Of a stretch of 64,000 nt of DNA, positions 12,871-61,045 are shown in pieces. The stretch spans positions 112,964,001 through 113,028,000 of the forward strand of contig NC_091287.1 of assembly GCF_032444005.1 (NCBI RefSeq), in the 5' to 3' direction. A program made the position numbers and the translations under genes. This DNA comes from Ranitomeya imitator (Eukaryota). Position 1 is the stretch's first letter. The number at the start of each line of letters is the position of its first letter. The notes beneath the pieces are model-generated. The model made no database searches and was not told the DNA's origin. It saw nothing but the letters and a program-made list of their open reading frames with translations.

Positions 12871-15800
12871 TTAAACCTCACTACACTCGAACGCAGCAAC
12901 GAGCTGCGGAGCTCGAATGTGCTTAGCAGGCTCCGAGGACCTGTCTTCTGGACCATAACCCTTCCAGTCCACCAAATAAAATTTTTTACCATGTACCATC
13001 TTACACTCCAGGATAGCGTTCACCTCGTAATCGTCCGTAGACGAACCCGATGTCCTGGCAGATGACTCAGAAAACCGGGACATGTGTACGGACTTTAAGA
13101 GGGACACATGGAAGGTTTCGGTGATACCTAGGCATGGAGCAAGGGCCAAACGGTAGACCACAGGGTTAACCTGTTCCAGGACCTTGAAAGGACCCAAATA
13201 GCGAGATGCAAACTTAGTGGACTCTACGCGCAGCCTTATAAATACGGGTTGAGAGCCACACTAAATCTGGAGCAAAGGTCGGAGCAGGGCGCCGATGTGC
13301 ATCAGCGGAGACCCTCATTCTCTCCTTGGAGGCCCGGATGGCATCCTGAGTGTGGTCCCAAATGTTGACGTGCCTCCACAGCCCAGTCTGCTACCCTGGA
13401 GTCAGAGTAAGACACGGGCATAGGCACAGAAACCCACGGATGCTGGTCGTAGTTAAGGAGGAATGGGGTCTGCCCAATGGAGTTGGCTATGGCGTTGTTC
13501 AGCGCAAACTCCGCCCATGGTAGCAAGGATTGCCAGTCATCCTGCCTGGCTGAAACAAAATGTCAAAGATATGTGACCACGGTCTGGTTGGCCTTTTCTA
13601 CCAACCCATTTGTCTCGGGATGACATGCAGAAGAGAGATTCTGCTCAATGCTGAGGAGATGACAAAGCTCTCTCCAGAACCGAGATGCAAACTGGGGACC
13701 CCGGTCACTGACAATTTTGTCTGGCAGACCATGTAGGTGAAAGATGTGTATAATAAACAACGCTGCCAGAGCCCGTGCAGAAGGTAGCCGTGGAAGAGGC
13801 ACCAAGTGCACCATTTTGGAAAAATGGTCGGTGATCACACAAATAAGAGTGCAGCTACGGGACTTGGGTAAGCCCACCACAAAGTTCATCCCGACCATCT
13901 CCCAGGGCCTGTATGCCACCAGCAGGGGTAAAGTAACCCAGCTGGCTGTTGTCAAGGGGACTTATTCTTAGCACAGGAGACACATGCCTGAATATAGTCC
14001 CCGACATCACAGGCCATATGCATCCATCAGTATGTTCTCGTCAGCAGCTCAGATGTCCTCTTGGTCCCAAAATGTCCACCCATCCTGGATGAATGAGCCC
14101 AAGAAAGAACCTCCGGTCACAAATGTGAGGGTACAAAAGTCTTGCCTGGGGGCACAGACTCTAGCGAGACCGGAGCCATGGTTCTCAGGCTCTCAGAAGG
14201 GACAATAAGCCGAGGCTCCTCTTCCCCCTCCTCAGATGACACCACGGAGCGAGAGAGAGCGTCTGCATGAATGTTCTTCTCCCCGGAGTGAAAATGGAGG
14301 GTGAAATGTAACCAGGAGAAGAACAGGGACAATCTAGCCTGGCGAGAATTTAGCCACTGGGCAGTCTGAATGTGCACCAAATTCTTGTGGTCGGTATAAA
14401 CTTGGAAGGGAAAGCGAGCCCCCTCCAGGAGGTGTCTCCACTCTGAGAAAGCCAACTTCATGGCTAGCAACTACCTGTCCCCGATGGAATAATTCCTCTC
14501 CGCTGGTGTGAAGGTCTTTGCGAAGAAGAAGCTAGGATGCTTCCGACCTTGAGCATCCTTTTGGAAGAGGACTGCTCCAGCACCAACGGATGAGGCATCC
14601 ACCTCCATTATAAAAGGCTTACCTACATCGGGGCGATGTAGGATGGGAGCGCTAGCAAAATGAGACTTAATATAAGTGAAGGCTTTGGAGACCTCCTCAG
14701 ACCACAATTTGGGATTTGCCCCCTTCTTGGTGAGGGCAACCAAGGGAGCTACCAAAGTTGAGAAATGAGGGATGAACTGACAATAATAGTTAATGAACCC
14801 CATAAAGCGCTGCACTGCTTTAAGAGAATGAGGTCCTTGCCAGTCCATCACACCCTGTAATTTGGCAGGATCCATAGCCAATCCCTGGGCGGAGATGATA
14901 TAGCCAAGGAAAGGTAAGGACTCCTGCTCAAACACACATTTTTCCAACTTGGCATAGAGGGAGTTTGCCCGTAAGAGGTCAAAGGCTTTGCAAATATCTC
15001 TCCGGTGGGAGTCAATATCTGGAGATTAGATGAGAATATCATCCAGATAGACTACGACCGAGGTGGAGAGCATATCCCGGAAGATATCATTTACAAAGTC
15101 TTGCAAATTGGCTGGGGCATTACAGAGCCCAAAGGGCATCACTAGGTATTCATAGTGCCCATCCCTGGTGTTAAAAGCCGTCTTCCATTCGTCCCCCTCA
15201 CGGATGCGAATCAGGATATAAGCACCCCGCAGATCTAGTTTAGTAAATACCCTTGCTCCTCGAAGCATATCAAAGAGCTCAGATATCAGGAGCAGTGGAT
15301 ACTTATTCTTAATGGTGATGGCGTTAAGACCCCTGTAGTCTATGTATGGACGTAGTTCTCCGTTCTTCTTCTTCATGAAGAAGAATCCAGCCCCTGCAGG
15401 AGACGCTGACTTCCTAAAGAATCCTCTTGCCAGATTCTCCTGGATGTACTGAGACATTGCCTTTGTCTCCGGGAGAGATAATGGATAGACTCGACCCCGG
15501 GGAGGCTCAGCACCAGGCAAGAGGTCAATAGGACAGTCATAGGGGCGGTGAGGCGGAAGGGTCTCTGCAGCCTTCTTGGAGAACACGTCTGCATAGGACC
15601 GATAATGCTTGGGGAGAGATGAAAGATCTGCGGGTACCTCTGTAGTAGCAACCTGAATGCACTCCCTCTGACATCTACCCTCACAAGATTTACTCCAACC
15701 CAAAATTCTGCCTGTGGACCACTCTATATGAGGGAAGTGATACTGAAGCCAAGGTGTCCCTAACAGGACCTCATCAATTCCTTCAGGAATGACAAGTAAG

Positions 15801-16405
15801 GATATAATCTTCTGATGAGATGGCGACATAGATAAAATAAATGGGATGGTCTGGTGAGTAATCTGTGAGAGCAGTGTTGACCCATTCACCACTCATACAG
15901 TTACTGGCTTGGCGAGCATCACCAGGGGTATTGCGTGACGTTGGGCGAAGGCAGATGACATAAAATTGCGCTCCGCCCCAGAATCCATGCAAAGCTCTAC
16001 CGTAAGAGTGGATGGGCCAATGGTAATTGTTCCCTTAAAGGACAGTTTAGAAGAAAACGCCGCTATGTCTAGTGAACCTCCTCCTATGGTTACTAGACGC
16101 AATCGTTTTCCCGACCGCTGGGGACATTTATTGCCATAATGTCCTATCTGCTGGCAGACATTACAGACCAAGGGTATTCGAGCAGCCCGGGACTTAGGTC
16201 CCGCTCGGGAAACCTCCATGGCCTCATGGGAGTCGGACGCCTGAACAGGAGATTCCAGAGGACTGGCGAAGGTAGGAGCCAACCGGAACCTCTGCCTACA
16301 CTGGGTCTGCTCCATCCTTCGCTCATTAAAACGAAAGTCAATGCAGGTGGATATAGATATAAGCTTCTCCAGTGTGGAAAGGAATCTCCCTGGTGGCAAA
16401 GGCAT
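12871..16405 (-). pseudogene. pol: Gypsy 1 zinc knuckle and pol (PR, RT, RNase H, IN, chromodomain), frameshifted
   Basis: CNVCQQIGHYGNKC; MDSGAE; KLDLRGAY and YLDD; YTDHKNL; DFVVGLP-like, SDRGPQF and HPETNG; YEVNAILE...YLVDWKGYG. Confidence 0.92.
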
Positions 16406-16982
16406 CCTTCACATGGTCAGCCAGTCCCCTCCAGAACACCGGACTAAGGACTTTATCCGGCCACTCCAGCTCTGATGCCAAAGTCCGGAAGTGGACGGCG
16501 AATTGCCTGACCATGGACGAACTCTGCATTAATGCCAGCAGTTGGAGTGCCATATCATGGGTGACACGAAGTCCCATAAAGACCAGTTTCAGAGAGTCCA
16601 GGAAGCGAGGAGCACTCTGCACCACATGATCATCACGCTCCCACAGCGGCGTTGCCCACTCCAACGCCCTGCCCGACAGAAGGGATATGATAAATCCCAC
16701 TTTAGCCCATTCCGTAGGAAAAAGTGCAGCCAGGAGCTCTAGATGTATGGCACACTGGCTCACGAATCCCCGACATAGCTTACTGTCACCAGCAAACTTG
16801 TCTGGTAATGGGAGACAGGATAATGTCAGAGCAGGGATGGCAGAGGACAAACTGGCTGCAGTTACGCTAGCAGCCTGAACAGCAACTGCGGTGACATCCA
16901 CAGCTGAGGTTGTGCATTCTAGAGCCACCAACCTACCCTCCAGCTGCTGGATGTACCGTTGTAGACGCTGATCATCCGCCAT
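16338..16982 (-). pseudogene. gag: Gypsy 1 gag (PEG10/RTL1-like capsid)
   Basis: PLPDKFAGD...CRGFVSQC...KVGFIISLLSGRALEWA...F.RGLADHVKD. Confidence 0.9.
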
Positions 16983-17879: not shown

Positions 17880-18594
17880 AATTTTATTGAAAAAACACAC
17901 AGAATAAAATTCTCAACCTTAATATGAACAGGTTAATACATAAAAAGTACCTCCGAGCTAAAAAAAAACGCAGGTATCGTGTACTGGTGAAAACACATAT
18001 TAAAGCTGCCTATATGACCAATTTTATAACGTCAGGCCTAAGAACTGGCATAATGCTCATAATAGAAGGCAATTATATGATGATGTCATGAAAATCTCTT
18101 ATGCATGGGAAGCGCTATATATGCACCACTAGTAATCTATATAAGAACTACATATGAAGCAATGATGCCTACATGTTCTATCGTGTTCGCTATTAGCTAC
18201 TGCTGAATGTATAAAACAACAGTTTGTGCAAAGCTGCGCCACACCAGCACCAGTAATCACTGAAACCACATACTAACAGGGGTGTATGGCGGAATAACTA
18301 AAGGCTAATAATAAACCATGCCGCTGGTAAAATGCACATCCAAGCGGCTATCTGCATCAACCTGGACACAGAATGTGCCGATGACATGAACGATCGCTAG
18401 TAACCGCCCATAACCGAGATGTAAAGTAAATAAAGAGATCAAAATATAATGTGCCCCGGAAGAAGAATTCCCTCGAAACGCGCGTTGGGCAGTTAGCAGG
18501 TCCCGTGTCTGGTGTCATTTGGTAATTATATTTTGATCTCTTTATTTACTTTACATCTCTGTTATGGGCGGTTACTAGCGATCGTTCATGTCAT
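17880..18594. mobile_element. PLE pLTR-like segment ending in a 70-bp hairpin
   Basis: Inverted arms 18381-18450 and 18525-18594 enclose a hammerhead-like motif; AATAAA-rich end on the minus strand near 17880. Confidence 0.5.
18452..18491 (+). ncRNA. Minimal type I hammerhead-like ribozyme (variant core)
   Basis: TGCCC-CGGAAGA-AGAATTCCCTC-GAAAC-GCGC-GTT-GGGCA. Stem I is TGCCC/GGGCA, loop III is palindromic, and the core has G at the canonical U4. Confidence 0.55.
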
Positions 18595-19771
18595 GTCATG
18601 TTTTCAAACTTTTGATTTTTATTCTATTAAACCAGAGCGTTATGTCACACAAAATAGTTAATAGATAACATTTACCTCATGTCCACTATATATCAGCACA
18701 ATTCTGAAACATTTATTTTTGTTAAGAATTTAGAAGGGTTAAATTTCTCATTATTCCAACACAATGTAAGGGGTCTATATGGCAGAAAATACCCAAAAAT
18801 GACACCCTTCTAAAAACTGCACCCCTCAAAATCCTCAAAACCACACTAAAGAGGTTTATTAATCCTTCAGGTGCCTCACAGGAATTAAAGCAATATGGAA
18901 GGAAAAAAATAAACATTTCACTTTTTTCACCAAAATTTTACTTTAGGCCCACAATTTTTGTATTTTTACAAAAGTAATAGGAGAAAATGGACTCCAGATT
19001 TGTTGGGAAATGTCTCCTGAGTACGCTGATACCCCATATGTGGGGGGAAACTACTGTTTGGGCCCACAGCAGGGCTCAGAAAGGAGGAAGCACAGTTTGA
19101 CTATTTGAACGCAAAATTGGCTGAAATCGAGAGCGGACGCCATGTCGTATTTGAAGAGTCCCTGATGTGCCTATACAGTGGAAACCCCCCACAAGTCACC
19201 CCATTTTGGAAACCATTTTGAATCTTCAGGTTCTTCACAGAAATTTATAATGCTGAGCTTTGAAAAGAAAAAATTACATTTTTCCACAAAAAATTTCTTT
19301 TAGCCCCAAATTCTTTATTTTCACAAGAGTAAAAGAAGAAAATAGACCCCAAAACTATTGTGAAATTTTCTTTGAGTATGCCGATGTCTTATATGTGGGG
19401 AAAAACTACTTTTTGGCGCACAGCAGGGCTCAGAAGGGAAGGAACGCCATTGGACTTTTTGAATGCTAAATTGCCTGGAATCATTAGTGGATGCCCTGTC
19501 GCGTTTGGAGAGCCCCTGATGTGCCTAAACAGTGGTAATCCCACAAGTGACCCCACTTTGGAAAGTAGCCCCCTCAAGGAATATATCTAGATGTGCGGTG
19601 AGCACCTTTAAACCCCAGGTGCTTTACAGACGTTTACAATGCAGAGCCGTGAAAATAAAAAAATCTCAATTTTTGTTCACAAGGGTAACAGGAGAAAATG
19701 AAACACACAATTTGTTGTGCATTTTCTCTTAAGTACACAGACACCCCATATGTCAAAGAAAACTACTACTA
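18595..19771. repeat. Internally repetitive DNA-transposon-like element, left part (continues at 23986)
   Basis: Recurring units ACCCCATATGTG...AAACTAC and CAGTGG..A.CCC.ACAAGTGACCCC.TTTTGGAAA on both sides of the LTR element. Confidence 0.55.
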
Positions 19772-20952
19772 CAGGGTCCTGGTCATTGCAGTAATGTCAT
19801 TCTCCTCTAGGTGAGAGTGATGTTACGTTTGGAGGCAAATAAGGACAACTGAATCCAGGTATCACAAACATGTAACACATTTCACACTCCAGGCCACCAG
19901 GGGAATCTCTTGCTCCTATTTATTAGGTCACTCCCCACATTGGTAAAACTGATGATGGCCTGTAGGGAAAGTGAGTTAGTTGCTGGCTGAGCTTTGCTCT
20001 GGTAGTTGGTCCCTGACAGGGGTGGGATCCTGTCAGAGATCGAAGAAGAAGGACACGGAGCTGTGCATGCCCTCAGAGCTGCAGCTCCTAGAAAGAGACA
20101 TCAAAGGCAGAACTGTATTGCAGCAAGCGTGCAAAGAAGTCATAGCAAAGGAGTGGATATCTGAAGGGGACCAGCCCTACACAGACTGCCTCCTTCTGAG
20201 GCACATAATCCCGGTAGCCAGAACACCAAGGGAGCAACGACCCTTTATGCCTTGCTCCACAGACAGGCAGGACAGCTAATTTCATATTACCTTTCCACCC
20301 TACACCCAGGAGGCACGGTGGCACCCCTTAGAGGCTGGGGCATGATAGAGTCCCTATAAACCGCCTCAAGCCACCAGTCATACGGGTTTGTCCTATCCTA
20401 TCCGAGGGACAGAGAGAGAGAGACATAACATCTACAACAGTTGTGAGGACCTTATGAGAAGCTTAGCAGTAAGGGACTATAACACTGCAGAGCTAGAGGA
20501 AGGCTTCTAATTTCCACCTGGACAAGGGGAATCTGGACTTGCCTCCAAACCGGCCAGACTCTGCCTGCCCTGTGATCTGGTGCCCTGGACTGTGGATGCT
20601 GAAGTCTTCAGTAAAGGTAAAGAGACTGCAACCTTGTGTCCTCGTTCTTCACTGCGCCTCTCACCATCCTACCATCTACACACCGGGAAGCCCTGGGGAT
20701 ACACTTCACCTGTGAGAAGGTATAACATCTAGCTGCCATAACCTCATCCCAGTAGACCCCTTAAAGCAGCGTCAGTCACCCTGACCGAATACCACAGGGG
20801 GCGTCACGAACACAAACTTTATCCCTTTAAAGACTTACCATTTTACACGGACGTCCCAGGGCCACAGGCCGGGTCAGCCACCGTGACATCCCCCTGTGAA
20901 CCAAAGGACCCAGTACCAAGTACCCCACGGCCCCATGGGGACGATCCAACTT

Positions 20953-20970
20953 TGGCGTCACGAACAGGAT
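20953..20970 (+). promoter_or_regulatory. Primer binding site, tRNA-Ser-like
   Basis: TGGCGTCACGAACAGGAT is complementary to a tRNA 3' end ATCCTGTTCGTGACG-CCA, recalled as a vertebrate tRNA-Ser(CGA) isodecoder (not database-checked). Confidence 0.7.
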
Positions 20971-21148
20971 CTATTATAGCCTGAAAATCTGGTCATGTGT
21001 GCCTAGAGACTGTGCCAGAACTGTGCCTAACCGTGATTTGTGCTAAAACACTGTGACTGATGAACTGTGATTTGCTGCCAAAAATTCCCACCAAAACCAC
21101 TGCCATTACAGCTCCACGAGGAGCGCCGGAGAAGAAGGGCATGCCATC

Positions 21149-22447
21149 ATGGGAGGAGACTACCAAAGCAGTGCCAAAAGTGACACGCGCCCCCTTCGAC
21201 AGCTGCTATGTAAGGGGGATGTGCCCATCAGCCAGGGAGGTCCACCCCTGATTTGCAATGGCGGGAACAAGGAGGAGTCCCGCCCCCCAGAAAATGGAGG
21301 AACAGCGTGCATGTGCAGCCACAGATCCAGGAGCAGGGATGGCGACCAGAGGGTACCTGATGAAGTGACCCAGAACCATCTCAGGCGACCAGAGGCGGAC
21401 CCGGACTCGTCGCTACAGGAGGATCCAAACTTCTTGGATCTGCAGGTGGAGGAGCTAGGTCACCAACTCCCGGACGCAGAACTGACCGAGGTGAAGAAAT
21501 GGAGGTCAGCCCTGTGTAGGAAGATCGCACTGGAAGAATCGCAGTCGGGGCAGCAGCGAACTCCAGCGTCCTCATCAGCGGAGCGGACCGGCATCGGTGG
21601 AACCACATCAGATGCAGGTACAGAAAATGCCCCTGCACCAGTGACCGATCCTGCTCCAGTGACCGCTCTCCCTGAGCTACTGATCCTGCTTCAGTGACCG
21701 CTCCTCCTCCAGACTGCGACCGAACACCAGCCGTCGCTCCAGCTCCAGTGTCTCCCCACACCACTGATGAGACACCACTCCCGCTCCTAGCGACCGAGGG
21801 CATACCGCTGGACGTGAGCCCTAAGGGGGTGATCTTCAAATTGGAAGCTCCGAGAGATGGGTTGAATGGGTCCTATATTGGAATCCTCACCTGGGAGGAG
21901 TATAGACAATGCCTTCTCTTACACTGGAGAGACAGAAAGGAGCGGGAAGCCCAACGTAAAGCGCAGACCCACAAAACCAAACGATGTAACAGAAGTCCAA
22001 CGACGGGGGGGGTAGTAGTAGCCTTTCACCCGAAAAGGGGTTGGGGCTTCATTCAGGAATCAGGACTGCTGGCAGAAGTCTATGTCACCAGCCGTGATGT
22101 GGAATCCCATCTCCGGGAAGGACATCCTGACCGAGATTTGTGCCAAGGGGATCATGTGACCTACACCCGCCACTGAAGCGAGAAAGGCTGGTATGCCAGA
22201 AATGTTAAACGATGTGCACCTGCAGTAGCGCCACCTGGTTCCAAAAACAAAGACCACCAGCGCTATCCCTCCAGTCCCTGAAACAGCAACTCCTCAAATC
22301 AACACTACTACAACCGTGTGCATAATCACCACCACTGAAACTGCCGCAGTGGCAAATGCTATAGCTGACATCCATACTCAGACAGCTAATGACTTGACCA
22401 CACAGCAAACAACAACAAACAACAACAAACCAATGACATTGATATAG
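21149..22447 (+). pseudogene. Disrupted ~430-aa ORF with a cold-shock (OB-fold) domain at 22006-22212
   Basis: ORFs 21149..21697 and 21694..22176 overlap at a CAGTGACCG repeat. The domain reads GVVVAFHPKRGWGFIQE...EVYVT...LCQGDHVTYTRH*SEKGWYARNV, followed by a Thr/Pro-rich tail in another frame. Confidence 0.75.
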
Positions 22448-23985
22448 CATCAATGAGGACTCGGATACAAACCTTCCCAAGCCAGGAAGTGTTCGTTACG
22501 GACTGATGCCTTGCAAACTACTATAAGAAAACAAAGCAAATCAGAAAACGACCGTACATAGTTATTCAACTTTTTTGCTGCTTAAAACCGATGTGGGTTA
22601 TTCTTTAAAGGGGTCCCGTGTTAAAGGGATCCTGTGTTTTGCACAGTTATCTTCTATTTAAAGGACATTTGGATCATGGACAGTGAATGGTCCACAAATT
22701 TTCCGTTGCACCTAGTTGGCACCTCCAAGGTGCATTCTGGTTCTGACCACTTGCTGGCATGGGTAGGGCTGGACTTGCTTGTATATAGTTTGCACCTTCA
22801 TAAAGGTGCTTCCTACTGGTTTCACAAGAGAAGCTTTTGAAGGGAATGTTCCTGATATCAACGTGAAAGTTCCTGCTGTTTTAAAGTTAAGGACTGACTA
22901 GAGTATTATTTGCACTACCTCATTGAAAGACTTGAATGCTATTTGAACCCTTAAAGGGAATATTGAATCGTCGCACTTTGCTGAACTCGTGCTTAGAGTT
23001 GGTTTATCATGCTAGTTAGTCGGTATGTTAGAAAGTTAATGTATTAAAGAGAGATTGCCAGAAGGGAGCTTGTCGAGGAACATCAGCTAGGCGGAGCTGG
23101 GACGATGCGAGAATAGCCGAGCAGATGTGGGAGTCTGCAGCTCCTGGCAGAAAGAGGAACCTGAGAAGGAAAGCACATCATTCAGTTAGTTAGATAGTCT
23201 GAAATTGTAGAGCACTTTGAATAAATGGAAGAGAAAATGCAGTGAGCTCCTGGGGGTTGATAGACTGTCCTGCACTTGAAGAAGAGTAAAAGTAATCAGA
23301 TGTTGATTTGCACTTGAATAAAGAAAAATGCTTGATTTGCATTTAAGAGATAGTATACCTGTAAGGGTAATTGCATTTCATAGTTAGTAATTGTTTTCCA
23401 CTCTTATTAAAATGGGCCCATAATGTATATATGTTTTTGTTATGCAACATTCAAGAGTCCTCACCTCCCATAAAGGGAAGCACCAGTTCATATTAATTTG
23501 TTTTATAGCATTTCAAAAATTTGTATGTCTTTTGCTAATGTATTGTTGCTTCTTTTCCCAGTCCGGGAGTACTGGATTAAACGGGGTGGAGTGCAGCGCC
23601 CCAGGGTCCTGGTCATTGCAGTAATGTCATTCACCTCTAGGGGAGAGTGATGTTACATTTGGAAGCAAAGAAGGATAACTGCATCCAGGTATCACAAGCA
23701 TGCAACACATTTCACGCTCCAGGCCACCAGGGGAAGCTCTTGCTCCTATTTATTAGGTCACTCCCTACATTGGTAAAACTGGTGACCTGTAGGGAAAGTG
23801 AGTTATTTGCTGGCTGAGCTTTGCTCAGGTAGTTGGTCCCTGACAGGGGTGGGATCCTGTCAGAGAGCGAGGAAGAAGGACATGGAGCTGTGCATGCCCT
23901 CCTAGAAAGAGACATCGAAGGCAGAACTGTATCACAGCGAGCGTGCAAAGAAGTCGTAGTAAAGGAGTGGAGTTGGGGCGATCCA

Positions 23986-24900
23986 ACTTAACAGTGGAAA
24001 ATCCCCACAGGTGACCTCATTTTGGAAACTAGACCCCTAAAGGAATTTATCTAGACATATGGTGAGCACCTTGAACCCACAGGTGCTTCATAGAAATTGA
24101 CATTGATCTGTGAAAATGAAAAAAATATATATTTTTTCCCACATATTTTTTTCATTTTCACAAGGATAGCAAGAGAAAATGGACCCCAAAATTTGTTTTG
24201 CAAGTTTTCCTGATTATTCTGATGCCCCATATATGGTCAAAAACTACTTTTGAGGCACAGTGCAAAGCTCAAAAGGGAAGAAGCTCCATATTTTACAAAC
24301 TACACCTCCAATGAATTCATCTAGGGGTGAAATGATCATATTGACCCCACATGTGCCTCCAATATACCATTTTGTGGTAAAGAAAAAATATTTACATTTT
24401 TACCACTAAAATGTTGTTTTAGTTCCAAGTTTTTAATTTTTCTAAGGGCTAATAGGAAACAAATGACCTCAGTTTGTTGTAAAAATTATCTCCTGAGTGC
24501 GCCAATACCCTCCATGTAGTCGGAAAATACTTTTCAGGCACAGTGCAAAGCTATAGTGCAGATTTTACTTTTATGGTTTGCGGGTGCCATGATCCACTGG
24601 GAGAACCTCTGAGGTGCCAGAACAGCGGAACCTCCATAAGTGAGCCCATTTTACAAACTACACCTTTCAATGAATTAATTTAGGGGTGCAGTGATCATAT
24701 TGACACCATAGGTGTGTCACGGAATTTTAGACCATTGGCAGTAAAGAGAAAATAATTGCATTTTACCACCAAAATTTAGTTTTTGCAACAGATTTTACAT
24801 TTTTACACAGGGAAACATGTAAAAGTGGCACCAAAATTTGTTCCACAATTTCTGCTGAATGTAGAAATAACCCATATCTGGCTGTATAGTAAAAAAATTA
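23986..24900. repeat. Internally repetitive DNA-transposon-like element, right part
   Basis: Same repeat units as 18595-19771. Confidence 0.55.
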
Positions 24901-29726: not shown

Positions 29727-32479
29727 TTTGGCACCTGTTCATATTAGCTTGGAAGTGCCAGTTAGTTTTGTTGTCATTGTATATAAGCTTTCTGAAGACT
29801 ACTCCACCCTTCAGCATGTGGCGGATTATAATTGCAGCAGAGTTCTACCTACCAATAAAATACCTGGAAAAGAGGTGTTCACAACATCCCAGGAATTCAG
29901 ACTTCAGTCTTAGAGAGGTATTCACATTAGACACATTAGGACTCATCAGTTTTGAGACCACCTTGTCATTGGATGATGGGCATGAATGAATTTGCCAAAT
30001 TGGCCTTATGTGCTAAGTGTCTCATTTTTTCCTAGTATCCAGAAGCAGCATTGCTATGTATATTTAATATATTTCACATTGACATGCTTTAGCACTACAG
30101 AGTGCAACTTTTTTTGTTTATTTTATTTAAAGTCACAGTACTCCCACAGGTGGGGGTGCATAATAAAAACAGGGGCTTTTTGTCACAGTACTCCCACATA
30201 TATGGGTGCAGAGTACACGCAGATGTTTAAAGGCACAGTACTCCCACAGACGAGGGTGTAGAGTACACACAGCAGCTTTTTGGCATAGCACTCCCACTGA
30301 GACACGTGTAGAGTACAAAAAGAGACTTTTTTTGCAGAGTCCACAGTCTAATTCTGTCCCTCACTCCAGCTGTGTCCTGTTGCTACACTAATCAGAGCAG
30401 AATGGCGGCAGCACTTGTGATCCAACATTTTTGCAGTCTGAGTCACATGATACGCCGGCCATTCACAGCCATGTCCATATTTGGCATGGCTGTGATGGCT
30501 CAGTAAGTGCCCACAGCCTAAAATCTTGTTGACTGGCTGCATTGTAGCCTTTCAGCAAACTTTAGGCATCTGAACCCAAACTGTAAACTGGACGTCTGGT
30601 AAAATGTCTGTGTTCGGGGTTCGGTACCGGACACTAGGTGTCCTGTACGAACCTCAAACTTTGCAGTTCGGTTCTGTTATCCTTATTCAGGACCAAATGG
30701 TGTACTTTCAAAAAGTGTTGTAAATTGTTTTACTTCACAAGAAAAGGTTACAAATCTGTCCATAGATAGTCATAAATAATTGTTTACTAAAGAAAAATAT
30801 ACATCACCAGTTTTACATTGACAATTTTTTTTTATATTAATGTTTTATATTTAGGATATAGCATAGTATAACCAAACCTATAAAAATAACAGAAGAAAGT
30901 TTACGAACTAAATTGTGAAATTTGTAGAGAAATATTTGTTATTTTTTTTGTTCATGGTAATGGTATCAACCCAATTTATATTCATGAGCCTTGAAGATAT
31001 TTCTTCGTCTAATAAAGAAGGTGATACTGTATGTTTTTTTTTTCTCTTAATCTGAAAAGATGGATAGATCACAAGAAATTCTTCTACATGGCATTAAAAT
31101 CACACAGTTGAATGACCTGTTCGACATTGTTCAAGATAACCATAGGTTCTTTCATTCTTTGAATGATTGTGACAATATTACTTCTCTGTTTAGTATACTT
31201 TTCAGTAGAATGAAGATCGGGAAAATAATTTTTAGCTTGAAATCTTATTCCAGAGGGAGAAACCCTAGAATAAATGTTGGAAAAGTAAAACTCGACTTGA
31301 TTGTTCAATACCTAATGTAAATGTGAAGCATTGTGAGTTACAACTTGTTTTATACCTTTGAAAAGTTGTTTGAGTATAGAACTACCTTTAGTGTTATTTG
31401 TTGTTGACCTATAGATAAGAATTTGATGCCTATATCATTGCTTATGAAAGCTCCATATCACTAATTTATGAAGCATTCAAGAAGGAAAGGAATAATATAA
31501 TATGGACTAAAGGCCCCTCCATACAGATTAGACTAAAGTAGGTGAAATTCTATGTTTATTGTACCCTCCAATCATTTACACTTACAGATGAGAGAAGGAT
31601 CCGGCAATTTAAATTTCTAATCCTTATTTTTAGGCTTATCTTGTGAAGTGGACCCACTAAGCCCCAGTTCCAGTTGGATACACATACGCTGGGGGTTGAT
31701 GCAAGCTGGTAACATGGCATGTGGGGAGTGAGGTCATGGCACACACAGTAGTCTTGGGAGCACCAAGGTGAATGAAGTAAAGTCAGCAGAATTAGAAGCA
31801 GGTTAAACATGGTGTGCGCAAGGGGCAGAGTACACAAAGCTAGAGTCTTGAATCTCAATCTGAAGACACAGTTTTGTGTCTTAATGGGCCTTAAGTAGAA
31901 TTATGGAGATTACATCACTGAGCCATGCTGGGTAACCTGAAAAAACCTAGCGAGCAGCAAAACAGAGGGCAGAGGAGTGAGGTGAAGGATGCCGAGCCCA
32001 GTACACCAGGGACAGGAGTGTAACACTTATGTTCTCAGTGACAATAAATTAGCACTAGATGCAGAGGCATAGCTAGGGTTTTGGTTCAGGGGGATGAAGC
32101 TCCTGAGTGGGCCCCTAACCAGGTAACCTTCATTACAATTCGGTGATGTGCCCTAATAGTGGAGGAGAACCTCAGCAGATAACTGAAGATAATCTCTATA
32201 TAACGACAAACATGAATATTACCGCAATATGGACAGTGGTAGATACCAGTCCTACAGAACATATAAGAGATCACAGCACAGTTACAGATAATGTCTTACC
32301 GCTGATGTTCTCTGATGGAATCGTTCACTTTTCCTGCCTTTTCCATCTGGCACAGACCGACATGACAAGTTCTTCCAGCCAGGACTCATCTGCAGAGAAT
32401 ACAACAAAGACATGTTTCACTTCTCAGCTTCCAGCCCCATCACCATCTATTCCCAACCTTCACAAACTCCTCATCCTGC

Positions 32480-32850
32480 TGATGCCCCAATACTGAGCCT
32501 CTGCTGCCGTATTTGTCCCTATTACTACACCTGATACCCCAATACTGAGCCGCTGCTGCCATATGTGTCCCTATTACTACACCTGATACCCCAATACTGA
32601 GCCACTGCTGCCATATGTGTCCCTATTACTGCCCCTGATACCCCAATACTGAGCCGCTGCTGCCATATGTGTCCATATTACTGCACCTGATACCCCAATA
32701 CTGAGCCGCTGCTGCTGTATGTGTCCCTATTACTGCCCCTGATACCCCAATACTGAGCCACTGCTTCTGTATGTGTCCCTATTACTGCCCCTGATACCCC
32801 AATACTGAGCCGCTGCTGCCTTATATGACCCTATTACTGCACCTGCTGTG
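32480..32850. repeat. 52-bp minisatellite
   Basis: Unit CTGATACCCCAATACTGAGCCGCTGCTGCCATATGTGTCCCTATTACTRCMC, about 7 copies. Confidence 0.9.
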
Positions 32851-34544: not shown

Positions 34545-35497
34545 ATGGACATTCAAGGTCTGTCCTCTTGTGTGGATCATCTCACTGCAAGGGTACAAAA
34601 CATTCAAGATTTTGTGGTTCAGAATCCTATGTTAGAGCCTAGAATTCCTATTCCTGATTTATTTTCTGGGGATAGATCTAGGTTCCTGAATTTCAAAAAT
34701 AATTGTAAACTGTTTCTAGCTTTGAAACCCTGCTCCTCGTTCAACAAGTAAAAATCATTATTTCTTTGTTGCGTGGTGACCCTCAAGACTGGGCATTTTC
34801 CCTTGCGCCAGGAGATCCTGCATTGCGTGATGTTGATGCGTTTTTTCTGGCGCTTGAATTGCTTTATGATGAACCAAATTCAGTGGATCAGGCAGAGAAA
34901 ATCTTACTGGCTTTGTGTCAGGGTCAGGATGAAGCGGAGGTGTACTGTCAGAAGTTTAGAAAGTGGTCTGTGCTTACTCAGTGGAATGAGTGTGCCCTGG
35001 CGGCAATTTTCAGAAAGGGTCTTTCTGAAGCCCTTAAGGATGTCATGGTGGGATTTCCCACGCCTGCTGGTCTGAATGAGTCTATGTCCTTGGCCATTCA
35101 GATCGATCGGCGCTTGCGTGAGCACAAAGCTGTGCACCATCTGGCGGTATTCTCTGAGCATAGGCCTGAGCCTATGCAGTGTGATAGGACTTTGACCAGA
35201 GCTGAACGGCAAGAACACAGACGTCGGAATGGGATGTGTTTTTACTGTGGTGAATCCACTCATGCTATCTCCGATTGTCCTAAGCGCACTAAGCGGTTTG
35301 CTAGGTCTGCCACCATTAGTACGGTACAGTCTAAATTTCTTTTGTCCGTTACTCTGATTTGCTCTCTGTCGTCTTATTCTGTTATGGCATTTGTGGATTC
35401 AGGCGCTGCGCTGAATTTGATGGACTTGGAGTTTGCCAGGCGCTGTGTTTTTTTCTTGGAGCCCATTTCAGTATCCTATTCCATTGAGAGGAATTGA
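34545..35497 (+). pseudogene. gag: Gypsy 2 gag, zinc knuckle and protease (one frameshift near 34740)
   Basis: PIPDLFSGDRSRFLNF; LRGDPQDWA; FRKGLSEALKD; CFYCGESTHAISDC; FVDSGA. Confidence 0.9.
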
Positions 35498-38458
35498 TGC
35501 TACGCCTTTGGCCAAGAATAAGCCTCAGTACTGGACTCAATTGACCATGTGCATGGCTCCTGCACATCAGGAGGATATTCGCTTTTTGGTGTTGCATAAT
35601 CTGCATGATGTGGTCGTTTTGGGGTTGCCATGGCTACAGGTCCATAATCCAGTGTTGGATTGGAAATCTATGTCTGTGTCCGGCTGGGGTTGTCAGGGGG
35701 TACATGGTGATGTTCCATTGTTGTCAATTTCACCTTCCACTCCTTTTGAAGTCCCTGAGTTTTTATCAGATTTCCGGGATGTATTTGAAGAGCCCAAATC
35801 CGGTGCCCTACCTCCTCATAGGGATTGCGATTGTGCTATTAATTTGATTCCTGGTAGTAAGTTTCCTAAGGGCCGTCTGTTTAATTTATCTGTGCCAGAG
35901 CACGCAGCTATGCGGAGTTATATAAAGGAATCCTTGTCGTCGTCACCATTGGGAGCAGGGTTCTTTTTTGTGGCCAAGAAGGATGGCTCTTTGAGACCTT
36001 GTATTGATTACCGCCTTCTTAATAAGATCACAGTCAAATTTCAGTATCCTTTGCCACTGCTGTCTGATTTGTTTGCTCGGATTAAGGGGGCTAGTTGGTT
36101 CACCAAGATAGATCTTCGAGGGACATATAATCTTGTGCGAATTAAACAGGGCGATGAATGGAAAACAGCATTTAATACGCCCGAGGGCCATTTTGAGTAC
36201 CTGGTTATGCCATTCGGGCTTTCTAATGCTCCATCTGTGTTTCAGTCCTTTATGCATGACATCTTCCGAGAGTACCTGGATAGATTCATGATTGTTTATT
36301 TGGATGACATTTTGGTCTTTTCGGATGATTGGGAGTCTCATGTGAAGCAGGTCAGAATGGTGTTCCAGGTCCTTCGTGCGAATTCCTTGTTTGTGAAGGG
36401 GTCAAAGAGTCTCTTTGGAGTTCAGAAGGTTTCATTTTTGGGTTTCATTTTTTCCCCTTCTACTATCGAGATGGACCCTGTTAAAGTTCAGGCCATTTAT
36501 GATTGGACTCAGCCGACATCTGTGAAGAGCCTGCAGAAGTTCCTGGGCTTTGCTAATTTTTACCGTCGCTTCATCGCTAATTTTTCTAGTATTGCTAAAC
36601 CGTTGACTGATTTGACCAAGAAAGGTGCTGATGTGGTCAATTGGTCCTCTGCGGCTGTAGAGGCTTTTCAGGAGTTGAAGCGTCGTTTTTCTTCTGCCCC
36701 TGTGTTGTGCCAGCCAGATGTTTCGCTCCCATTTCAGGTCGAGGTTGATGCTTCTGAGATTGGAGCAGGGGCTGTTTTGTCACAAAGAAGTTCTGATGGC
36801 TCGGTGATGAAACCATGTGCCTTCTTTTCTAGAAAATTCTCGCTTGCTGAGCGCAATTATGATGTTGGCAATCGAGAGTTGTTGGCCATGAAGTGGGCAT
36901 TCGAGGAGTGGCGACATTGGCTTGAAGGAGCTAAACATCGCGTGGTGGTCTTGACGGATCACAAGAATTTGACTTATCTCGAGTCTGCCAAACGGTTGAA
37001 TCCTAGACAGGCTCGATGGTCGCTCTTTTTCTCCCGTTTTGATTTTGTGGTTTCATACCTTCCGGGATCTAAGAATGTGAAGGCTGATGCCCTTTCAAGG
37101 AGTTTTGTGCCTGACTCTCCGGGTGTTCCGGAGCCGGCGGGTATTCTTAAAGAGGGGATAATTTTGTCTGCCATCTCCCCTGATTTGCGGCGCGTGCTGC
37201 AGAAGTTTCAGGCTGATAGACCTGACCGTTGTCCTACGGAGAAACTGTTTGTCCCTGATAGATGGACTAGTAGAGTTATCTCTGAAGTTCATTGTTCGGT
37301 GTTGGCGGGTCATCCTGGAATCTTTGGTACCAGAGATTTGGTGGCTAGATCCTTTTGGTGGCCTTCTTTGTCACGGGATGTGCGTTCTTTTGTGCAGTCC
37401 TGTGGGACTTGTGCTCGGGCTAAGCCCTGCTGTTCTCGTGCCAGTGGTTTGCTTTTGCCCTTGCCGGTCCCGAAGAGGCCCTGGACGCATATTTCCATGG
37501 ATTTTATTTCTGATCTCCCTGTTTCTCAAAGGATGTCGGTCATTTGGGTGGTTTGTGATCGCTTCTCTAAGATGGTCCATTTGGTACCCTTGTCTAAATT
37601 GCCTTCCTCCTCTGATTTGGTGCCATTGTTTTTCCAGCATGTGGTTCATTTGCATGGCATTCCAGAGAACATCGTCTCGGACAGAGGTTCCCAGTTTGTT
37701 TCGAGGTTTTGGTGGTCCTTTTGTGCTAAGATGGGCATTGATTTGTCTTTTTCTTCGGCTTTCCATCCTCAGACTAATGGCCAAACCGTACGAACTAATC
37801 AGACTTTGGAAACATATCTGAGATGCTTTGTTTCTGCTGATCAGGGTGATTGGGTGTCCTTCTTGCCTTTGGCTGAGTTCGCCCTTAATAATCGGGCCAG
37901 CTCGGCTACTTTAGTTTCTCCTTTTTCTGTAATTCTGGTTTCCATCCTCGCTTCTTTTCAGGGCAGGTTGAGCCTTCGGACTGTCCTGGTGTGGATACGG
38001 TGGTGGACAGGTTGCAGCAGATTTGGACTCATGTGGTGGACAATTTGACATTGTCCCAGGAGAAGGCTCAACGTTTCGCTAACCGCCAGTGCTGTGTTGG
38101 GCCCCGACTTCGTGTTGGGGATTTGGTTTGGTTGTCATCTCGTCATGTTCCTATGAAGGTTTCCTCTCCTAAGTTTAAGCCTCGTTTCATTGGGCCATAT
38201 AAGATTTCTGAAGTTCTTAATCCTGTGTCATTTCATTTGGACCTTCCAGCTTCTTTTGCCATCCATAATGTGTTCCATAGGTCGTTGTTGCGGAGATACG
38301 TGGCGCCTATGGTTCCCTCCGTTGATCCTCCTGCCCCGGTGTTGGTCGAGGGGGAGTTGGAGTATGTGGTGGAGAAGATTTTGGATTCTCATGTTTCGAG
38401 ACGGAAACTCCAGTACCTGGTCAAGTGGAAGGGTTATGGTCAGGAAGATAATTCCTAG
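35433..38458 (+). pseudogene. pol: Gypsy 2 pol (RT, RNase H, IN, chromodomain), frameshifted
   Basis: KIDLRGTY, YLDD, VDAS, LTDHKNL, HCSVLAGHPG, MDFISDLP, SDRGSQF, FIGPYKI, and EYVVEKILDS...QYLVKWKGY ending at a stop. Confidence 0.95.
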
Positions 38459-39161
38459 GTTTTTGCCTCTGATGTTCATGCTGCCGATCTAGTTCGTGCC
38501 TTTCATTTGGCTCATCCTGATCGGCCTGGGGGCTCTGGTGAGGGTTCGGTGACCCCTCCTCAAGGGGGGGGTACTGTTGTGAATTCTGTTGTCGAACTCC
38601 CTCCTGTGGTCGTGAATGGTACTTCGGCGAGTTCTGTCCATGGACTCCCTCTGGTGGCTGTGAGTGAAGCTGCTGCTTCTGAGGTTCCTTACACAGGTGA
38701 CGTGGTTTATCCTTTGGTTGGCTGCTCTATTTAACTCCACTCAGATCGTTACTCCATGCCAGCTGTCAATGTTCCTGCATTGGTTCAGTTCGCTTTTGGA
38801 TCTTTCTGGTGACCTGTCTTCTCCAGCAGAAGCTAAGTTCCTGATAGTTATTATTTGTTCATTGTTTCCTTGTCCAGCTGGTTTTCATCTTTACTCACAG
38901 TCAATATATGTGGGGGGCTGCCTTTTCCTTTGGGGAATTTCTCTGAGGCAAGGTAGGCTTTATTTTCTATCTCTAGGGCTAGCTAGCTCTTAGGCTGTGA
39001 AGAGGCGTCTAGGGAGTGTCAGGAACGCTCCACGGCTATTGCTAGTTGTTGTGATAGGATTAGGGCCTGCGGTCAGCAGAGCTCCCACATCCCAGAGCTT
39101 GTCCTGTGTGAGTTTAACTATCAGGTCGTGCCGGGTGCTCCTAACCACCAGGTCCATAACA

Positions 39162-39690
39162 GACCCTGTAGTATAAGGCAGCACCCCATAAGAAGACTCT
39201 AATAAAAGGCAGCACCCCATAGGCAGACCCTGTAGTATAAGACAGCACCCCATAGGCAGACCCTGTAGTAAAAGGCAGCCCCCTATAGGCAGATCCTAAA
39301 GTATAAGGCAGCCCCCTTATAGGCAGATCCTAAAGTATAAGGCAGCTCCCTATAGGCAGATCCTAAAGAATAAGGCAGCCCCCTATGGGCAGATCCTGAA
39401 GAATAAGGCAGCCCCCTATAGGCAGATCCTAAAGTATAAGGCAGCCCCCCTATAGGCAGATCCTGTAGTATAAGGCAGCCCCCCTATAGGCAGATCCTGA
39501 AGTATAAGGCAGCCCCCCTATAGGCAGATCCTGAAGTATAAGGCATCCCCCTATAGGCAGATCCTGAAGTAAAAGGCAGCCCCCCTATAGGCAGATCCTG
39601 AAGTATAAGGCAGCCCCCCTATAGGCAGATCCTGAATTTTAAGGCAGCACCCTTATAGGCAGATTCTGAAGTATAAGGCAGCCCCCATAA
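39162..39690. repeat. 33-35-bp minisatellite (right of Gypsy 2)
   Basis: ATAGGCAGATCCTGAAGTATAAGGCAGCCCCCCT units continue the array split by the retrotransposon. Confidence 0.9.
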
Positions 39691-44228: not shown

Positions 44229-44360
44229 TAATAATAATAATCTTTATTTTTATATAGCGCTAACATATTCCGCAGCGCTTTACAGTTTTGCACACATTAT
44301 CATCACTGTCCCCGATGGGGCTCACAATCTAGAATCCCTATCAGTATGTCTTTGGAATGT

Positions 44361-44391
<31 letters not shown>

Positions 44392-44489
44392 ACGCAAACA
44401 CGGAGAGAACATACAAACTCTTTGAAGATGTTGTCCTGGGTGGGATTAGAACCCAGGACCCCAGCGCTGCAAGGCTGCTGTGCTAACCT
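44229..44489 (-). mobile_element. tRNA-derived SINE with L2-type tail, inserted in the LINE
   Basis: Minus strand GGTTAGCACAGCAGCC...GGGTTCTAATCCC (A/B-box-like) and an (ATT)n tail at 44229-44243. Confidence 0.75.
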
Positions 44490-47026: not shown

Positions 47027-47150
47027 AGAGCTCCTTTTAGTGGGACTGGGAAAGCGGGGCTGGGCGAATGGTTATAAGGTTAGAGAGGTTACGGAAATTT
47101 GTGATAGAGCGTGGATGGGAGGTAGAACTGACTGTGGGGATGTGGTGAGG

Positions 47151-47195
47151 AAGACCAGGATTTGGAGAGATATCACCAGCAGTGAGAAGGAGCAG
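47151..47195 (-). other. 2A-like ribosome-skipping motif (final Pro mutated)
   Basis: LLLLTAGDISPNPG(L) upstream of the APE domain. Confidence 0.7.
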
Positions 47196-54830: not shown

Positions 54831-55314
54831 ACGGCATGATGGGCACTGTAGCGGCAGCAGGGTCCGGCCTGCTGATTGAAGCTGCGGGCCCTGCGGGGCC
54901 TTGTGTTAAGATGGGGCCTGCAGGTGCATCCGTGGCGAGGCACGGAGGTGCCATGAGACCGACGGCTGCATCTAACCTGAGGTCTTGGGGCATTACAGGG
55001 GCTGCGGCTGCATCTGCCACCACTTCTTTCCGCTGGTCTGACATAGCTTCTCCCCATTGCTAACCTTATTATGGTCGGTGTCTCCTCTCCAGAGTCTGCA
55101 GCGGTTCTTCCGGTGTGTCCCCGGTACTTTGCAGCATCTTCACTTCTGGCTCTCCTTCTGGCGTTCTCAGCAGCGTGGCACCCGTTACCTTCTTCGCGCT
55201 CTTTCCAGCTGGCTCCACCCATGAAGATACGCCTCTTCTCTCGCACTCTTCGTGGCGCTATAACGGCGTCAGTTTTGGCGGCAATTTGGCAATAAACAGT
55301 CTCTTAGGCGCACA
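54831..55314 (-). mobile_element. Fragment of a different LTR-element leader and ORF start, inserted in ERV gag
   Basis: Flanked by TGAACA at 54825-54830 and 55315-55320; resembles 20997-21170 of the cold-shock LTR element. Confidence 0.6.
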
Positions 55315-55463
55315 TGAACAGTTTTGCTGGGACAGTCCACTGCTATTGACCTGTTCTTGGGCCTAGCCACTATCAGTGGTTTCCTGATTGGCTGTCTTAG
55401 TCCATGCACAAAGGCCTGTGTCAACATTTGCCTGTGTATCTGGTCATGAATGGTGAAGCCTAA

Positions 55464-60012: not shown

Positions 60013-61045
<1,033 letters not shown>

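What the first reader, a model, noticed from the sequence alone, without database searches (positions are those of the whole stretch)
19772..23985. LTR element carrying a cold-shock-domain ORF instead of gag/pol
Seen: two LTRs, an 18-nt PBS and a PPT enclose 2.6 kb with no RT, IN or capsid motif. The only ORF (about 430 aa reconstructed; two frameshifts, one TGA likely from CGA) contains GVVVAFHPKRGWGFIQE-x5-EVYVT-x15-LCQGDHVTY-x4-EKGWYARNV. Known: cold-shock domains follow G.VKWFN..KGFGFI...DVFVH...L..G..V.F.....KG..A.NV and bind single-stranded RNA/DNA (YBX1, LIN28, CspA). Inference: a trans-mobilised retroelement family encoding its own nucleic-acid chaperone, perhaps aiding packaging, translation or defence evasion. 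I know no description of this, but could not search the literature.
Basis: partly seen in the sequence, partly recalled or inferred. Interest (0 to 1): 0.82.

Follow-up and report, generated by a model that had tools for sequence, protein, structure and literature searches.

The report
Defective frog provirus carrying cold-shock gene
This is a decayed endogenous retrovirus-like element of a poison-frog-type genome. Its gag, pol and env genes are replaced by one now-broken gene for a Y-box-like cold-shock RNA-binding protein, a kind of gene capture already reported for bird retroviruses.

Summary
Two direct repeats (19772-20948 and 23592-23985, 93% identical where both exist) flank a PBS-like site, a 2.6-kb interior and a purine tract.

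The interior has no RT, IN or capsid signal. It holds one broken ORF (21149-22526) with a cold-shock domain at 22006-22212.

The domain is real. Pfam CSD is sub-threshold in this copy, but relatives pass the threshold. A family profile hits YB-1/YBX2 structures at E 4e-10. AlphaFold models match cold-shock proteins.

The ORF belongs to a family found only in dendrobatoid frogs (Ranitomeya, Phyllobates, Anomaloglossus). Seven further proteins were found. The six looked up are intronless and intact, and RefSeq calls them 'uncharacterized'.

The leader and start codon are homologous to the leader and gag start of a degenerate MLV-like ERV elsewhere in the window. So this is best read as a helper-dependent, gag-start-to-cargo defective provirus.

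The copy is old (LTR K2P 0.068), lacks a target duplication and is dead.

CSD capture by ERVs was described in birds in 2025, so it is not categorically new.

Not shown: whether the intact frog relatives are LTR-borne, whether mobilisation occurs in trans, and what the protein does.

The parts
19772..20948 (+). 5' LTR (about 1.18 kb). Its first ~10 nt are missing. It ends in CA.
   Evidence: Repeat families D1, D5 and D10. Alignment A1. The end motif is shared with the right LTR.
20158..20936 (+). Segment of the 5' LTR that is absent from the 3' LTR. It is bounded by GGGGAC microhomology. It contains a TATAAA at about 20354.
   Evidence: Gap in alignment A1; sequence. Reading it as a deletion in the right LTR is an inference.
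20953..20970 (+). PBS-like 18-mer beginning TGG, 4 nt after the LTR's CA. It resembles a decayed tRNA-Lys3 primer-binding site.
   Evidence: Unique in the window. Edit distance 4 to the Lys3 PBS string; 1 of 400 shuffles as close. The string was checked in the literature.
20985..21158 (+). Leader and start-codon region, with two blocks (20985-21013 and 21076-21158) homologous to the leader and gag start of the ERV at 55213-55325 (-).
   Evidence: blastn: 74% over 77 nt, E 3e-6. Local alignment scores 57 and 38 against shuffle means of 17 and 15 (sd ~2.3 and ~2.2), with none of 300 and 500 shuffles as high.
21149..22526 (+). Broken ORF (about 459 codons) for the CSD protein. It has a frameshift at 21667-21682, an in-frame TGA at 22174-22176, at least one frameshift between 22239 and 22452, and a TAA at 22524-22526.
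   Evidence: ORF list. tblastn of P0002-P0005 against the region. Alignment A2.
21796..21933 (+). Conserved middle domain (three strands plus a long helix) of unknown function.
   Evidence: AlphaFold models with pLDDT 70-85. Conserved with P0002 and P0003. No structural match other than the CSD hits.
22006..22212 (+). Cold-shock domain, interrupted by the TGA before its last strand.
   Evidence: Pfam PF00313 at 21.2 bits. Family profile against YB-1/YBX2, E 4e-10. Foldseek hits to cold-shock proteins.
22527..23578 (+). AT-richer non-coding 3' interior (about 1.05 kb) of unknown origin.
   Evidence: No Pfam hit in its ORF pieces. No similarity elsewhere in the window. Composition.
23579..23591 (+). 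Polypurine-tract-like run (11 of 13 purines) directly before the 3' LTR.
   Evidence: Sequence.
23592..23985 (+). 3' LTR. It begins with TG, ends with CA, and is internally deleted relative to the 5' LTR.
   Evidence: The terminal inverted repeat matches 7 of 9 positions, read from the sequence.
55213..55325 (-). Comparator: leader and gag start (ATG at 55222) of a degenerate MLV-like ERV (50.5-55.3 kb, minus strand). This stretch shares the leader homology.
   Evidence: ERV genes: zinc knuckle, RT, RNase H and IN. RT and RNase H are closest to MLV/XMRV.

Best explanation
The locus is an old, dead, replication-defective endogenous provirus (a non-autonomous LTR element).

It keeps the cis-acting parts a retroviral genome needs in order to be copied: two LTRs, a tRNA primer-binding site, a leader and a polypurine tract. 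Between them lies a single ORF.

That ORF begins at what was the gag start codon of a gamma/epsilon-like (MLV-like) retrovirus lineage. Within a few codons it runs into unrelated sequence. This sequence encodes a disordered N-terminal half, a small conserved beta-plus-helix domain, a Y-box-type cold-shock domain and a Thr/Ser-rich tail.

Shown: this anatomy, the CSD fold, the membership of the ORF in a Dendrobatoidea-restricted family of intronless CSD proteins, and the leader homology to an ERV.

Inferred:
(1) The cargo was acquired by recombination during reverse transcription. This is how transducing retroviruses acquire cellular genes. The source would have been a Y-box-like host gene or another element that already carried it.
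(2) The element could be copied only with Gag-Pol supplied by a helper ERV that recognised its leader.
(3) The protein bound single-stranded RNA through the CSD. It most likely stabilised, or helped recruit, the element's or the helper's genomic RNA, as host YB-1 is reported to do for retroviruses.
(4) This copy has decayed neutrally since insertion, roughly 15-35 million years ago if the neutral rate is 1-2.5e-9 per site per year. That rate is an assumption.
For: - LTR pair, PBS-like site and purine tract.
- No RT, IN or gag domain in the interior.
- The ORF is collinear over its whole length with intact relatives P0002 and P0003.
- CSD evidence: Pfam scores for relatives are 32-37 bits, above the 27-bit cut-off. 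The family profile hits YB-1/YBX2 structures at E 4e-10 with only a one-residue gap; bacterial Csp, CSDE1, CARHSP1 and LIN28 score lower. The AlphaFold CSD has pLDDT around 90. Foldseek top hits are all cold-shock proteins, with TM about 0.85.
- All eight closest proteins among 1.84 billion representatives come from Dendrobatidae or Aromobatidae.
- The six that were looked up are intronless.
- The CSD is the best-conserved part of the family: 48% mean pairwise identity against 25% for the middle domain.
- The leader and ATG are homologous to an MLV-like ERV in the window. Similarity ends at about the third codon.
- Precedent: 46 bird ERVs carry CSDs, captured several times. YB-1 is reported to support HIV replication (title and abstract of PMC6040738).
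Against: - There is only one copy in the window. None of the relatives' DNA could be fetched, so it is unknown whether they are LTR-flanked.
- There is no target-site duplication, and the left LTR end is missing.
- The PBS is 4 edits away from the best candidate tRNA site. That candidate came from the human Lys3 sequence, not a frog tRNA.
- The ERV that shares the leader shares no LTR sequence, and its own PBS is not recognisably preserved.
- Each relative forms a single-member cluster at 90% identity. Three of the six looked up lie within 10 kb of called host genes, and none has a called TE gene nearby. This fits ordinary low-copy genes as well as it fits TE cargo.
- No cellular progenitor of the cargo was identified.
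- The equivalents of two of the four YB-1 base-stacking residues are not conserved, so RNA binding is not assured.
Confidence: 0.6

Rival explanations
1. The CSD proteins are an ordinary host gene family. It would be lineage-specific, intronless and fast-evolving, and perhaps born by retroposition of a Y-box-like gene. The window copy would be a single accidental transduction of one member's mRNA into a provirus, or a pseudogene that happens to sit between LTR-like repeats. On this view there is no CSD-carrying retroelement family.
For: - Relatives are intact.
- Each is the only member of its 90% cluster, and each was seen on one contig.
- Three of the six looked up sit within 10 kb of called host genes (guanylate cyclase, fibrinogen-like, WD40). 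None has a called TE protein nearby.
- One gene carries two RefSeq protein accessions, which suggests several transcript models.
- Only one copy lies in 64 kb of a TE-rich window.
Against: - All six relatives looked up are intronless.
- In the window, the ORF starts exactly at the ERV-homologous gag start and sits between PBS and PPT.
- RefSeq annotation normally masks repeats, so the lack of TE neighbours and the low annotated copy number say little. This point rests on my own knowledge.
- Even on this reading, the window element is still a CSD-carrying defective provirus.
Confidence: 0.22
2. The ORF is a highly divergent Gag, not a captured gene. It would belong to a gag-only non-autonomous LTR element in which the zinc-knuckle nucleocapsid has been replaced by a CSD. 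The middle domain would then serve for assembly.
For: - The ORF starts at the gag ATG (MGG...), and the leader is homologous to an ERV.
- The nucleic-acid-binding domain sits towards the C-terminus, where NC would be.
- A conserved small folded domain lies upstream.
- The related ERV's own gag is short and has no detectable capsid domain.
Against: - No matrix, capsid or NC profile hit at E<=1.
- No protein similarity to the ERV's gag beyond three residues.
- Foldseek finds only cold-shock proteins in PDB, and only phage or giant-virus CSPs in BFVD. No retroviral fold appears.
- The N-terminal half is predicted to be disordered or of low complexity.
Confidence: 0.1
3. It is not a retroelement at all. 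On this view the two repeats are a local segmental duplication around a gene, and the PBS and PPT are chance look-alikes.
For: No target-site duplication. The repeats are of unequal length. The PBS is imperfect. The purine tract is short.
Against: - The TGG 18-mer lies exactly 4 nt after the left repeat's CA.
- The purine tract lies exactly before the TG of the right repeat.
- The terminal TG...CA comes with a 7-of-9 inverted repeat.
- The leader is homologous to a bona fide ERV, at the same position relative to its gag ATG.
- The whole unit interrupts a 355-bp host tandem repeat.
Confidence: 0.04

Closest known systems
Bird endogenous retroviruses carrying cold-shock domains (Mol Biol Evol 2025, PMC12287698)
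   Same: An ERV with a Pfam PF00313 domain of host type. Those authors report repeated, independent capture, including in their gamma-like 'ERV-G' group. They interpret it as an adaptive acquisition of an RNA-regulating domain.
   Different: The bird ERVs were complete, with RT, and the CSD sat at varying positions. Here gag, pol and env are gone and the CSD protein is the only gene. The host is a frog. No sequence comparison with the bird CSDs was possible, because no supplement was held.
Transducing (acutely transforming) defective retroviruses with gag-X fusion genes. Named from my own knowledge; not tested here.
   Same: The layout is LTR, PBS, leader, gag start fused to foreign coding sequence, PPT, LTR. 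pol and env are lost, which implies dependence on a helper virus.
   Different: The cargo is an RNA-binding domain, not a growth-control gene. No cellular progenitor with introns was identified. Relatives occur in at least four frog species from two families, which argues for a long-lived lineage or domestication rather than a somatic one-off.
Vertebrate Y-box proteins (YBX1, YBX2)
   Same: These are the best-matching solved structures for the family profile (E 4e-10, 42.8 bits). The whole CSD aligns with a one-residue gap, including the long eukaryote-type loop.
   Different: Identity is only about 25-30%. The Trp65 and His87 equivalents are not kept. The flanking regions bear no resemblance. 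The genes are intronless and confined to Dendrobatoidea. This is not a Y-box orthologue.
Non-autonomous LTR elements (gag-only BARE-2; LARD/TRIM) and LINE-1 ORF1p. Named from my own knowledge; not tested here.
   Same: A retroelement that encodes no polymerase, or only an RNA-binding or chaperone protein, and relies on a partner's enzymes.
   Different: Those proteins are Gag or ORF1 homologues. This one has no detectable Gag fold.

Membership tests
LTR retroelement / provirus | Two long direct terminal repeats | tested here: met
   345 of 369 shared positions are identical. The right copy is internally deleted.
LTR retroelement / provirus | LTR termini TG...CA with a short inverted repeat | tested here: inconclusive
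   The right LTR starts with TG (23592) and ends with CA (23985), with a 7-of-9 inverted repeat. The left LTR lacks its first ~10 nt. The same ACTT follows both CA ends, so the true end is uncertain.
LTR retroelement / provirus | Primer-binding site complementary to a tRNA 3' end, next to the 5' LTR | tested here: inconclusive
   An 18-mer starting TGG lies 4 nt after the LTR. Its edit distance to the Lys3 PBS string is 4 (1 of 400 shuffles as close). No frog tRNA was available, and the window holds none.
LTR retroelement / provirus | Polypurine tract next to the 3' LTR | tested here: met
   23579-23591, 11 of 13 purines, abutting the TG of the LTR. It is short.
LTR retroelement / provirus | Target-site duplication | tested here: not met
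   The left flank stops about 115 bp earlier in the host repeat unit than the point where the right flank resumes. I read this as a deletion across the left junction.
Autonomous retrovirus / LTR retrotransposon | Encodes RT, RNase H and integrase | tested here: not met
   No such Pfam hit in any interior ORF piece. No tblastx similarity to the window's pol genes.
Class I (gamma/epsilon-like) ERV lineage | Sequence homology to a member outside the cargo | tested here: met
   The leader and gag start are homologous to the ERV at 55213-55325 (-). That ERV's RT and RNase H are closest to MLV/XMRV (E 7e-52 and 5e-34). The homology covers only about 110 nt.
Cold-shock domain (Pfam PF00313) | Profile score at or above the curated cut-off (27 bits) | tested here: inconclusive
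   The window copy scores 21.2 bits on a domain truncated by the stop. Relatives P0005, P0001 and P0015 score 36.9, 33.7 and 32.1 bits. P0003, P0004 and P0007 score 23.7-26.8 bits.
Cold-shock domain (Pfam PF00313) | Five-stranded OB-type beta-barrel | tested here: met
   The model of relative P0003 has five strands at pLDDT around 90, and its Foldseek hits are cold-shock proteins with TM about 0.85. The window piece models strands 1-4.
Cold-shock domain (Pfam PF00313) | RNP1/RNP2 aromatic nucleic-acid-binding residues | tested here: inconclusive
   GWGFI and VFV/VYV are kept. The equivalents of YB-1 Trp65 and His87 are not aromatic or His. The roles of these YB-1 residues are from my own knowledge.
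Y-box protein family | Orthology: high CSD identity, intron-containing gene, conserved flanking regions | tested here: not met
   About 25-30% identity to YB-1. Intronless. Flanks unrelated. No hit outside Dendrobatoidea apart from generic CSDs.
Retroviral Gag | Matrix, capsid or nucleocapsid domains | tested here: not met
   No Pfam hit. No similarity to the neighbouring ERV's gag beyond MGG. No retroviral fold in PDB or BFVD searches.
Transducing defective retrovirus | The cargo has an identifiable cellular progenitor | not testable with these tools
   Frog genome DNA could not be fetched. Only a resemblance to Y-box CSDs was established.

The most novel reading that the evidence does not exclude
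The CSD protein is the working gene of a long-lived, helper-dependent retroelement lineage that has persisted since before the Dendrobatidae-Aromobatidae split. The cold-shock domain would do the job of the Gag nucleocapsid: binding and delivering the element's own RNA into a helper ERV's particles. Alternatively, the lineage has since been domesticated into a poison-frog-specific family of RNA-binding genes.
Probability: 0.18. Interest if true: 0.75.

Novelty: new member of a known kind. Interest (0 to 1): 0.5.

Why it matters
If the inference holds, amphibian retroviruses acquired a Y-box-type RNA-binding domain independently of those in birds. That would strengthen the case that CSD capture is a recurrent and probably adaptive move for retroviruses. 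The case is plausible because host YB-1 is reported to help retroviral replication.

The finding also flags a set of intact, intronless 'uncharacterized' CSD genes in poison-frog RefSeq annotations. Their origin may be retroviral, and their function can be tested. Nothing here touches on a hazard: the copy is dead and lacks all replication genes.

Tried and rejected
- Word-index protein search with the N-terminal ORF piece: no hits.
- Word-index search with the family alignment A3: nothing returned, not even known members. I treat this as a tool limitation.
- Exact look-up of the window's 182-aa piece: not on record.
- IMG/VR scan with a relative's CSD: nothing.
- Self-comparison of the element against the window: no second copy and no shared LTR.
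- A shared PBS between the element and the ERV: rejected, because the ERV's site is 6 edits from the Lys3 string and aligns poorly.
- tRNA scan and Rfam scan of the window: nothing.
- The bacterial promoter/terminator scan is irrelevant to a eukaryotic LTR and was ignored.
- PDB sequence search with the single 160-aa piece: only non-significant RRM hits.
- Supplementary tables of the bird ERV paper are not held.
Full report
**1. Observation**

The region contains two direct repeats, 19772-20157 and 23602-23971. Of 369 aligned positions 345 are identical (16 transitions, 8 transversions), which gives K2P 0.068.

The last 15 nt of the right repeat, up to 23989, recur at 20937-20952. I therefore read the left LTR as running to the CA at 20948, about 1.18 kb. 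The right LTR (23592-23985) has lost the equivalent of 20158-20936. GGGGAC microhomology lies at both edges of that gap.

Four nucleotides after the left LTR's CA lies an 18-mer beginning TGG (20953-20970), unique in the window. It is 4 edits from the tRNA-Lys3 primer-binding string. I confirmed that string in the literature. Only 1 of 400 shuffled 70-nt stretches came as close. No frog tRNA was available for comparison, so the primer identity is a lead and not a result.

A purine run (23579-23591, 11 of 13 purines) abuts a TG that I take as the start of the right LTR. The termini then form a 7-of-9 inverted repeat. The left LTR lacks its first ~10 nt.

The whole unit interrupts a ~355-bp host tandem repeat. 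The left flank stops about 115 bp earlier in the repeat unit than the point where the right flank resumes. So there is no target-site duplication. I infer a deletion across the left junction.

**2. Interior**

The 2.6-kb interior gave no Pfam hit to RT, RNase H, integrase, protease, Gag or Env in any ORF piece of 40 aa or more, on either strand, at E<=1. It has no tblastx similarity to the window's several pol genes.

One ORF dominates. tblastn with intact relatives shows it is collinear from the ATG at 21149 to a TAA at 22524-22526, about 459 codons. It is broken in these places:
- a frameshift at 21667-21682, inside a short duplication;
- an in-frame TGA at 22174-22176;
- at least one further frameshift between 22239 and 22452.

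I did not assess which change produced the stop.

**3. Is it a cold-shock domain?**

The window piece scores 21.2 bits (E 2.7e-4) on Pfam PF00313, covering profile positions 3-51 of 66. This is below the 27-bit cut-off because the last strand lies beyond the stop.

A full HMMER scan of 1.84 billion representatives found 40 hits. The eight closest form a family. Three of them pass the Pfam cut-off at 32-37 bits, and three more score 24-27 bits.

A profile of the family hits the solved CSDs of YB-1 and YBX2 best (E 4e-10, 42.8 bits). The alignment covers the whole domain with a one-residue gap. Bacterial Csp (about 35 bits), CSDE1 (25), CARHSP1 (21) and LIN28 (19) score lower.

AlphaFold on relative P0003 (residues 185-365, eight-sequence alignment) gives a five-stranded barrel at pLDDT around 90. 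All top Foldseek hits in PDB are cold-shock proteins, with target TM about 0.85 and probability 1.0. The window's own piece models strands 1-4 at pLDDT 85-92. It retrieves the same proteins more weakly, as expected for a truncated domain.

The GWGFI and VFV/VYV motifs are kept. The equivalents of YB-1 Trp65 and His87 are not.

**4. The family**

The eight closest proteins come from Ranitomeya variabilis (three), R. imitator, Phyllobates terribilis and Anomaloglossus baeobatrachus (two). These species belong to Dendrobatidae and its sister family Aromobatidae.

The remaining hits are multi-CSD proteins. The two whose source was looked up are protist sequences (eukprot, one from the dinoflagellate Biecheleria cincta). 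Their scores sum over several domains, and I regard them as generic similarity.

For six relatives, the gene span equals exactly three times (residues + 1), so they are intronless. All six are intact (328-549 aa), are annotated only as 'uncharacterized protein', and are single-member clusters at 90% identity.

The window copy groups with two R. variabilis proteins (support 96/98). It is 49% identical to P0002 over the 160-aa piece and 63% identical over the preceding 60 aa.

Across the family the CSD is the best-conserved part: 48% mean pairwise identity against 25% for the upstream domain. That upstream domain, three strands plus a long helix at pLDDT 70-85, matched nothing in PDB or BFVD.

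I could not obtain DNA for any relative. Whether they sit between LTRs is therefore unknown. This is the main gap in the analysis.

**5. Link to a retrovirus**

Two collinear blocks in the leader (20985-21013 and 21076-21158, the second running through the ATG) are homologous to 55213-55325 on the minus strand:
- blastn gives 74% identity over 77 nt, E 3e-6;
- local alignment scores are 57 and 38, against shuffle means of 17 and 15 with sd ~2.3 and ~2.2, and none of 300 and 500 shuffles was as high.

That stretch is the leader and MGG... start of the gag of a degenerate ERV. The ERV has a zinc-knuckle ORF (54559-55044), RT (52721-53611), RNase H (51979-52683) and integrase (50537-51097). Its RT and RNase H are closest to MLV/XMRV among solved structures (E 7e-52 and 5e-34).

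Protein similarity between the two ORFs ends after three residues. The two elements share no LTR sequence. The ERV's primer site is too decayed to compare.

The simplest reading is a defective provirus in which foreign coding sequence is joined to the gag start. The packaging-proximal leader is retained.

**6. Mechanism (inferred)**

An element with LTRs, PBS, leader and PPT but no gag, pol or env can be copied only by a helper's proteins.

A CSD protein translated from the genomic RNA would bind single-stranded RNA. [quoted passage not shown] The authors of the bird study argue that repeated CSD capture by ERVs is adaptive. I therefore favour a role in stabilising or recruiting retroviral RNA. 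This was not tested here.

One stop and three or more frameshifts in 1.4 kb fit neutral decay at about 3.5% divergence per LTR. So the ORF was probably open at insertion.

**7. Comparison with what is known, and verdict**

CSD-bearing ERVs are described for birds: 46 ERVs, several independent captures, in alpha/beta-like and gamma-like groups (PMC12287698). Defective gag-X proviruses are classical; this rests on my own knowledge.

What is new is the host clade, the loss of all viral genes around the CSD, and the link to a family of intact frog genes. My library searches found no paper on amphibian ERVs with CSDs.

I rate the finding as a new member of a known kind, with moderate interest. The upside depends on whether the intact relatives prove to be retroelement-borne or domesticated.

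Noticed in passing
window 18900-19771 and 23990-24850: A ~355-bp tandem host repeat lies on both sides of the element. The element's insertion and a junction deletion interrupt it.
   Followed up: partly
window 18381-18594: 70-nt inverted repeat arms, 99% complementary, 74 nt apart. This looks like a MITE or hairpin.
   Followed up: no
window 50537-55325 (-): A degenerate MLV-like ERV with IN, RNase H, RT and a zinc-knuckle ORF. Its gag is short with no detectable capsid, and no LTR pair was found. It carries a 28-bp x14 tandem array at 51354-51752. A ~480-bp palindromic insertion sits at 55.5-56.0 kb, upstream of its leader.
   Followed up: partly
window 34766-38458 (+): A Ty3/gypsy-type element with an uninterrupted 871-aa pol ORF (RT, RNase H, integrase) and a gag fragment upstream.
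   Followed up: no
window 15026-16982 (-): Another LTR-retrotransposon fragment: gag (DUF4939/Retrotrans_gag), a zinc knuckle and the start of RT.
   Followed up: no
window 44000-48000: A stretch with extreme GC skew (+0.41 to +0.46). It holds a 574-aa RT ORF on the minus strand (44483-46207).
   Followed up: no
window 59980-60528 (+): A Tc1/mariner transposase N-terminal fragment (Sleeping-Beauty-like HTH domains).
   Followed up: no
window 62917-63784; 39160-39686; 32479-32845: Minisatellite arrays: 49 bp x18, 34 bp x16 and 52 bp x7.
   Followed up: no
window 20949-20952 and 23986-23989: The same four bases, ACTT, follow the CA end of both LTRs. Either the LTR really extends four bases further, or this is a 1-in-256 coincidence with the target site.
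   Followed up: partly
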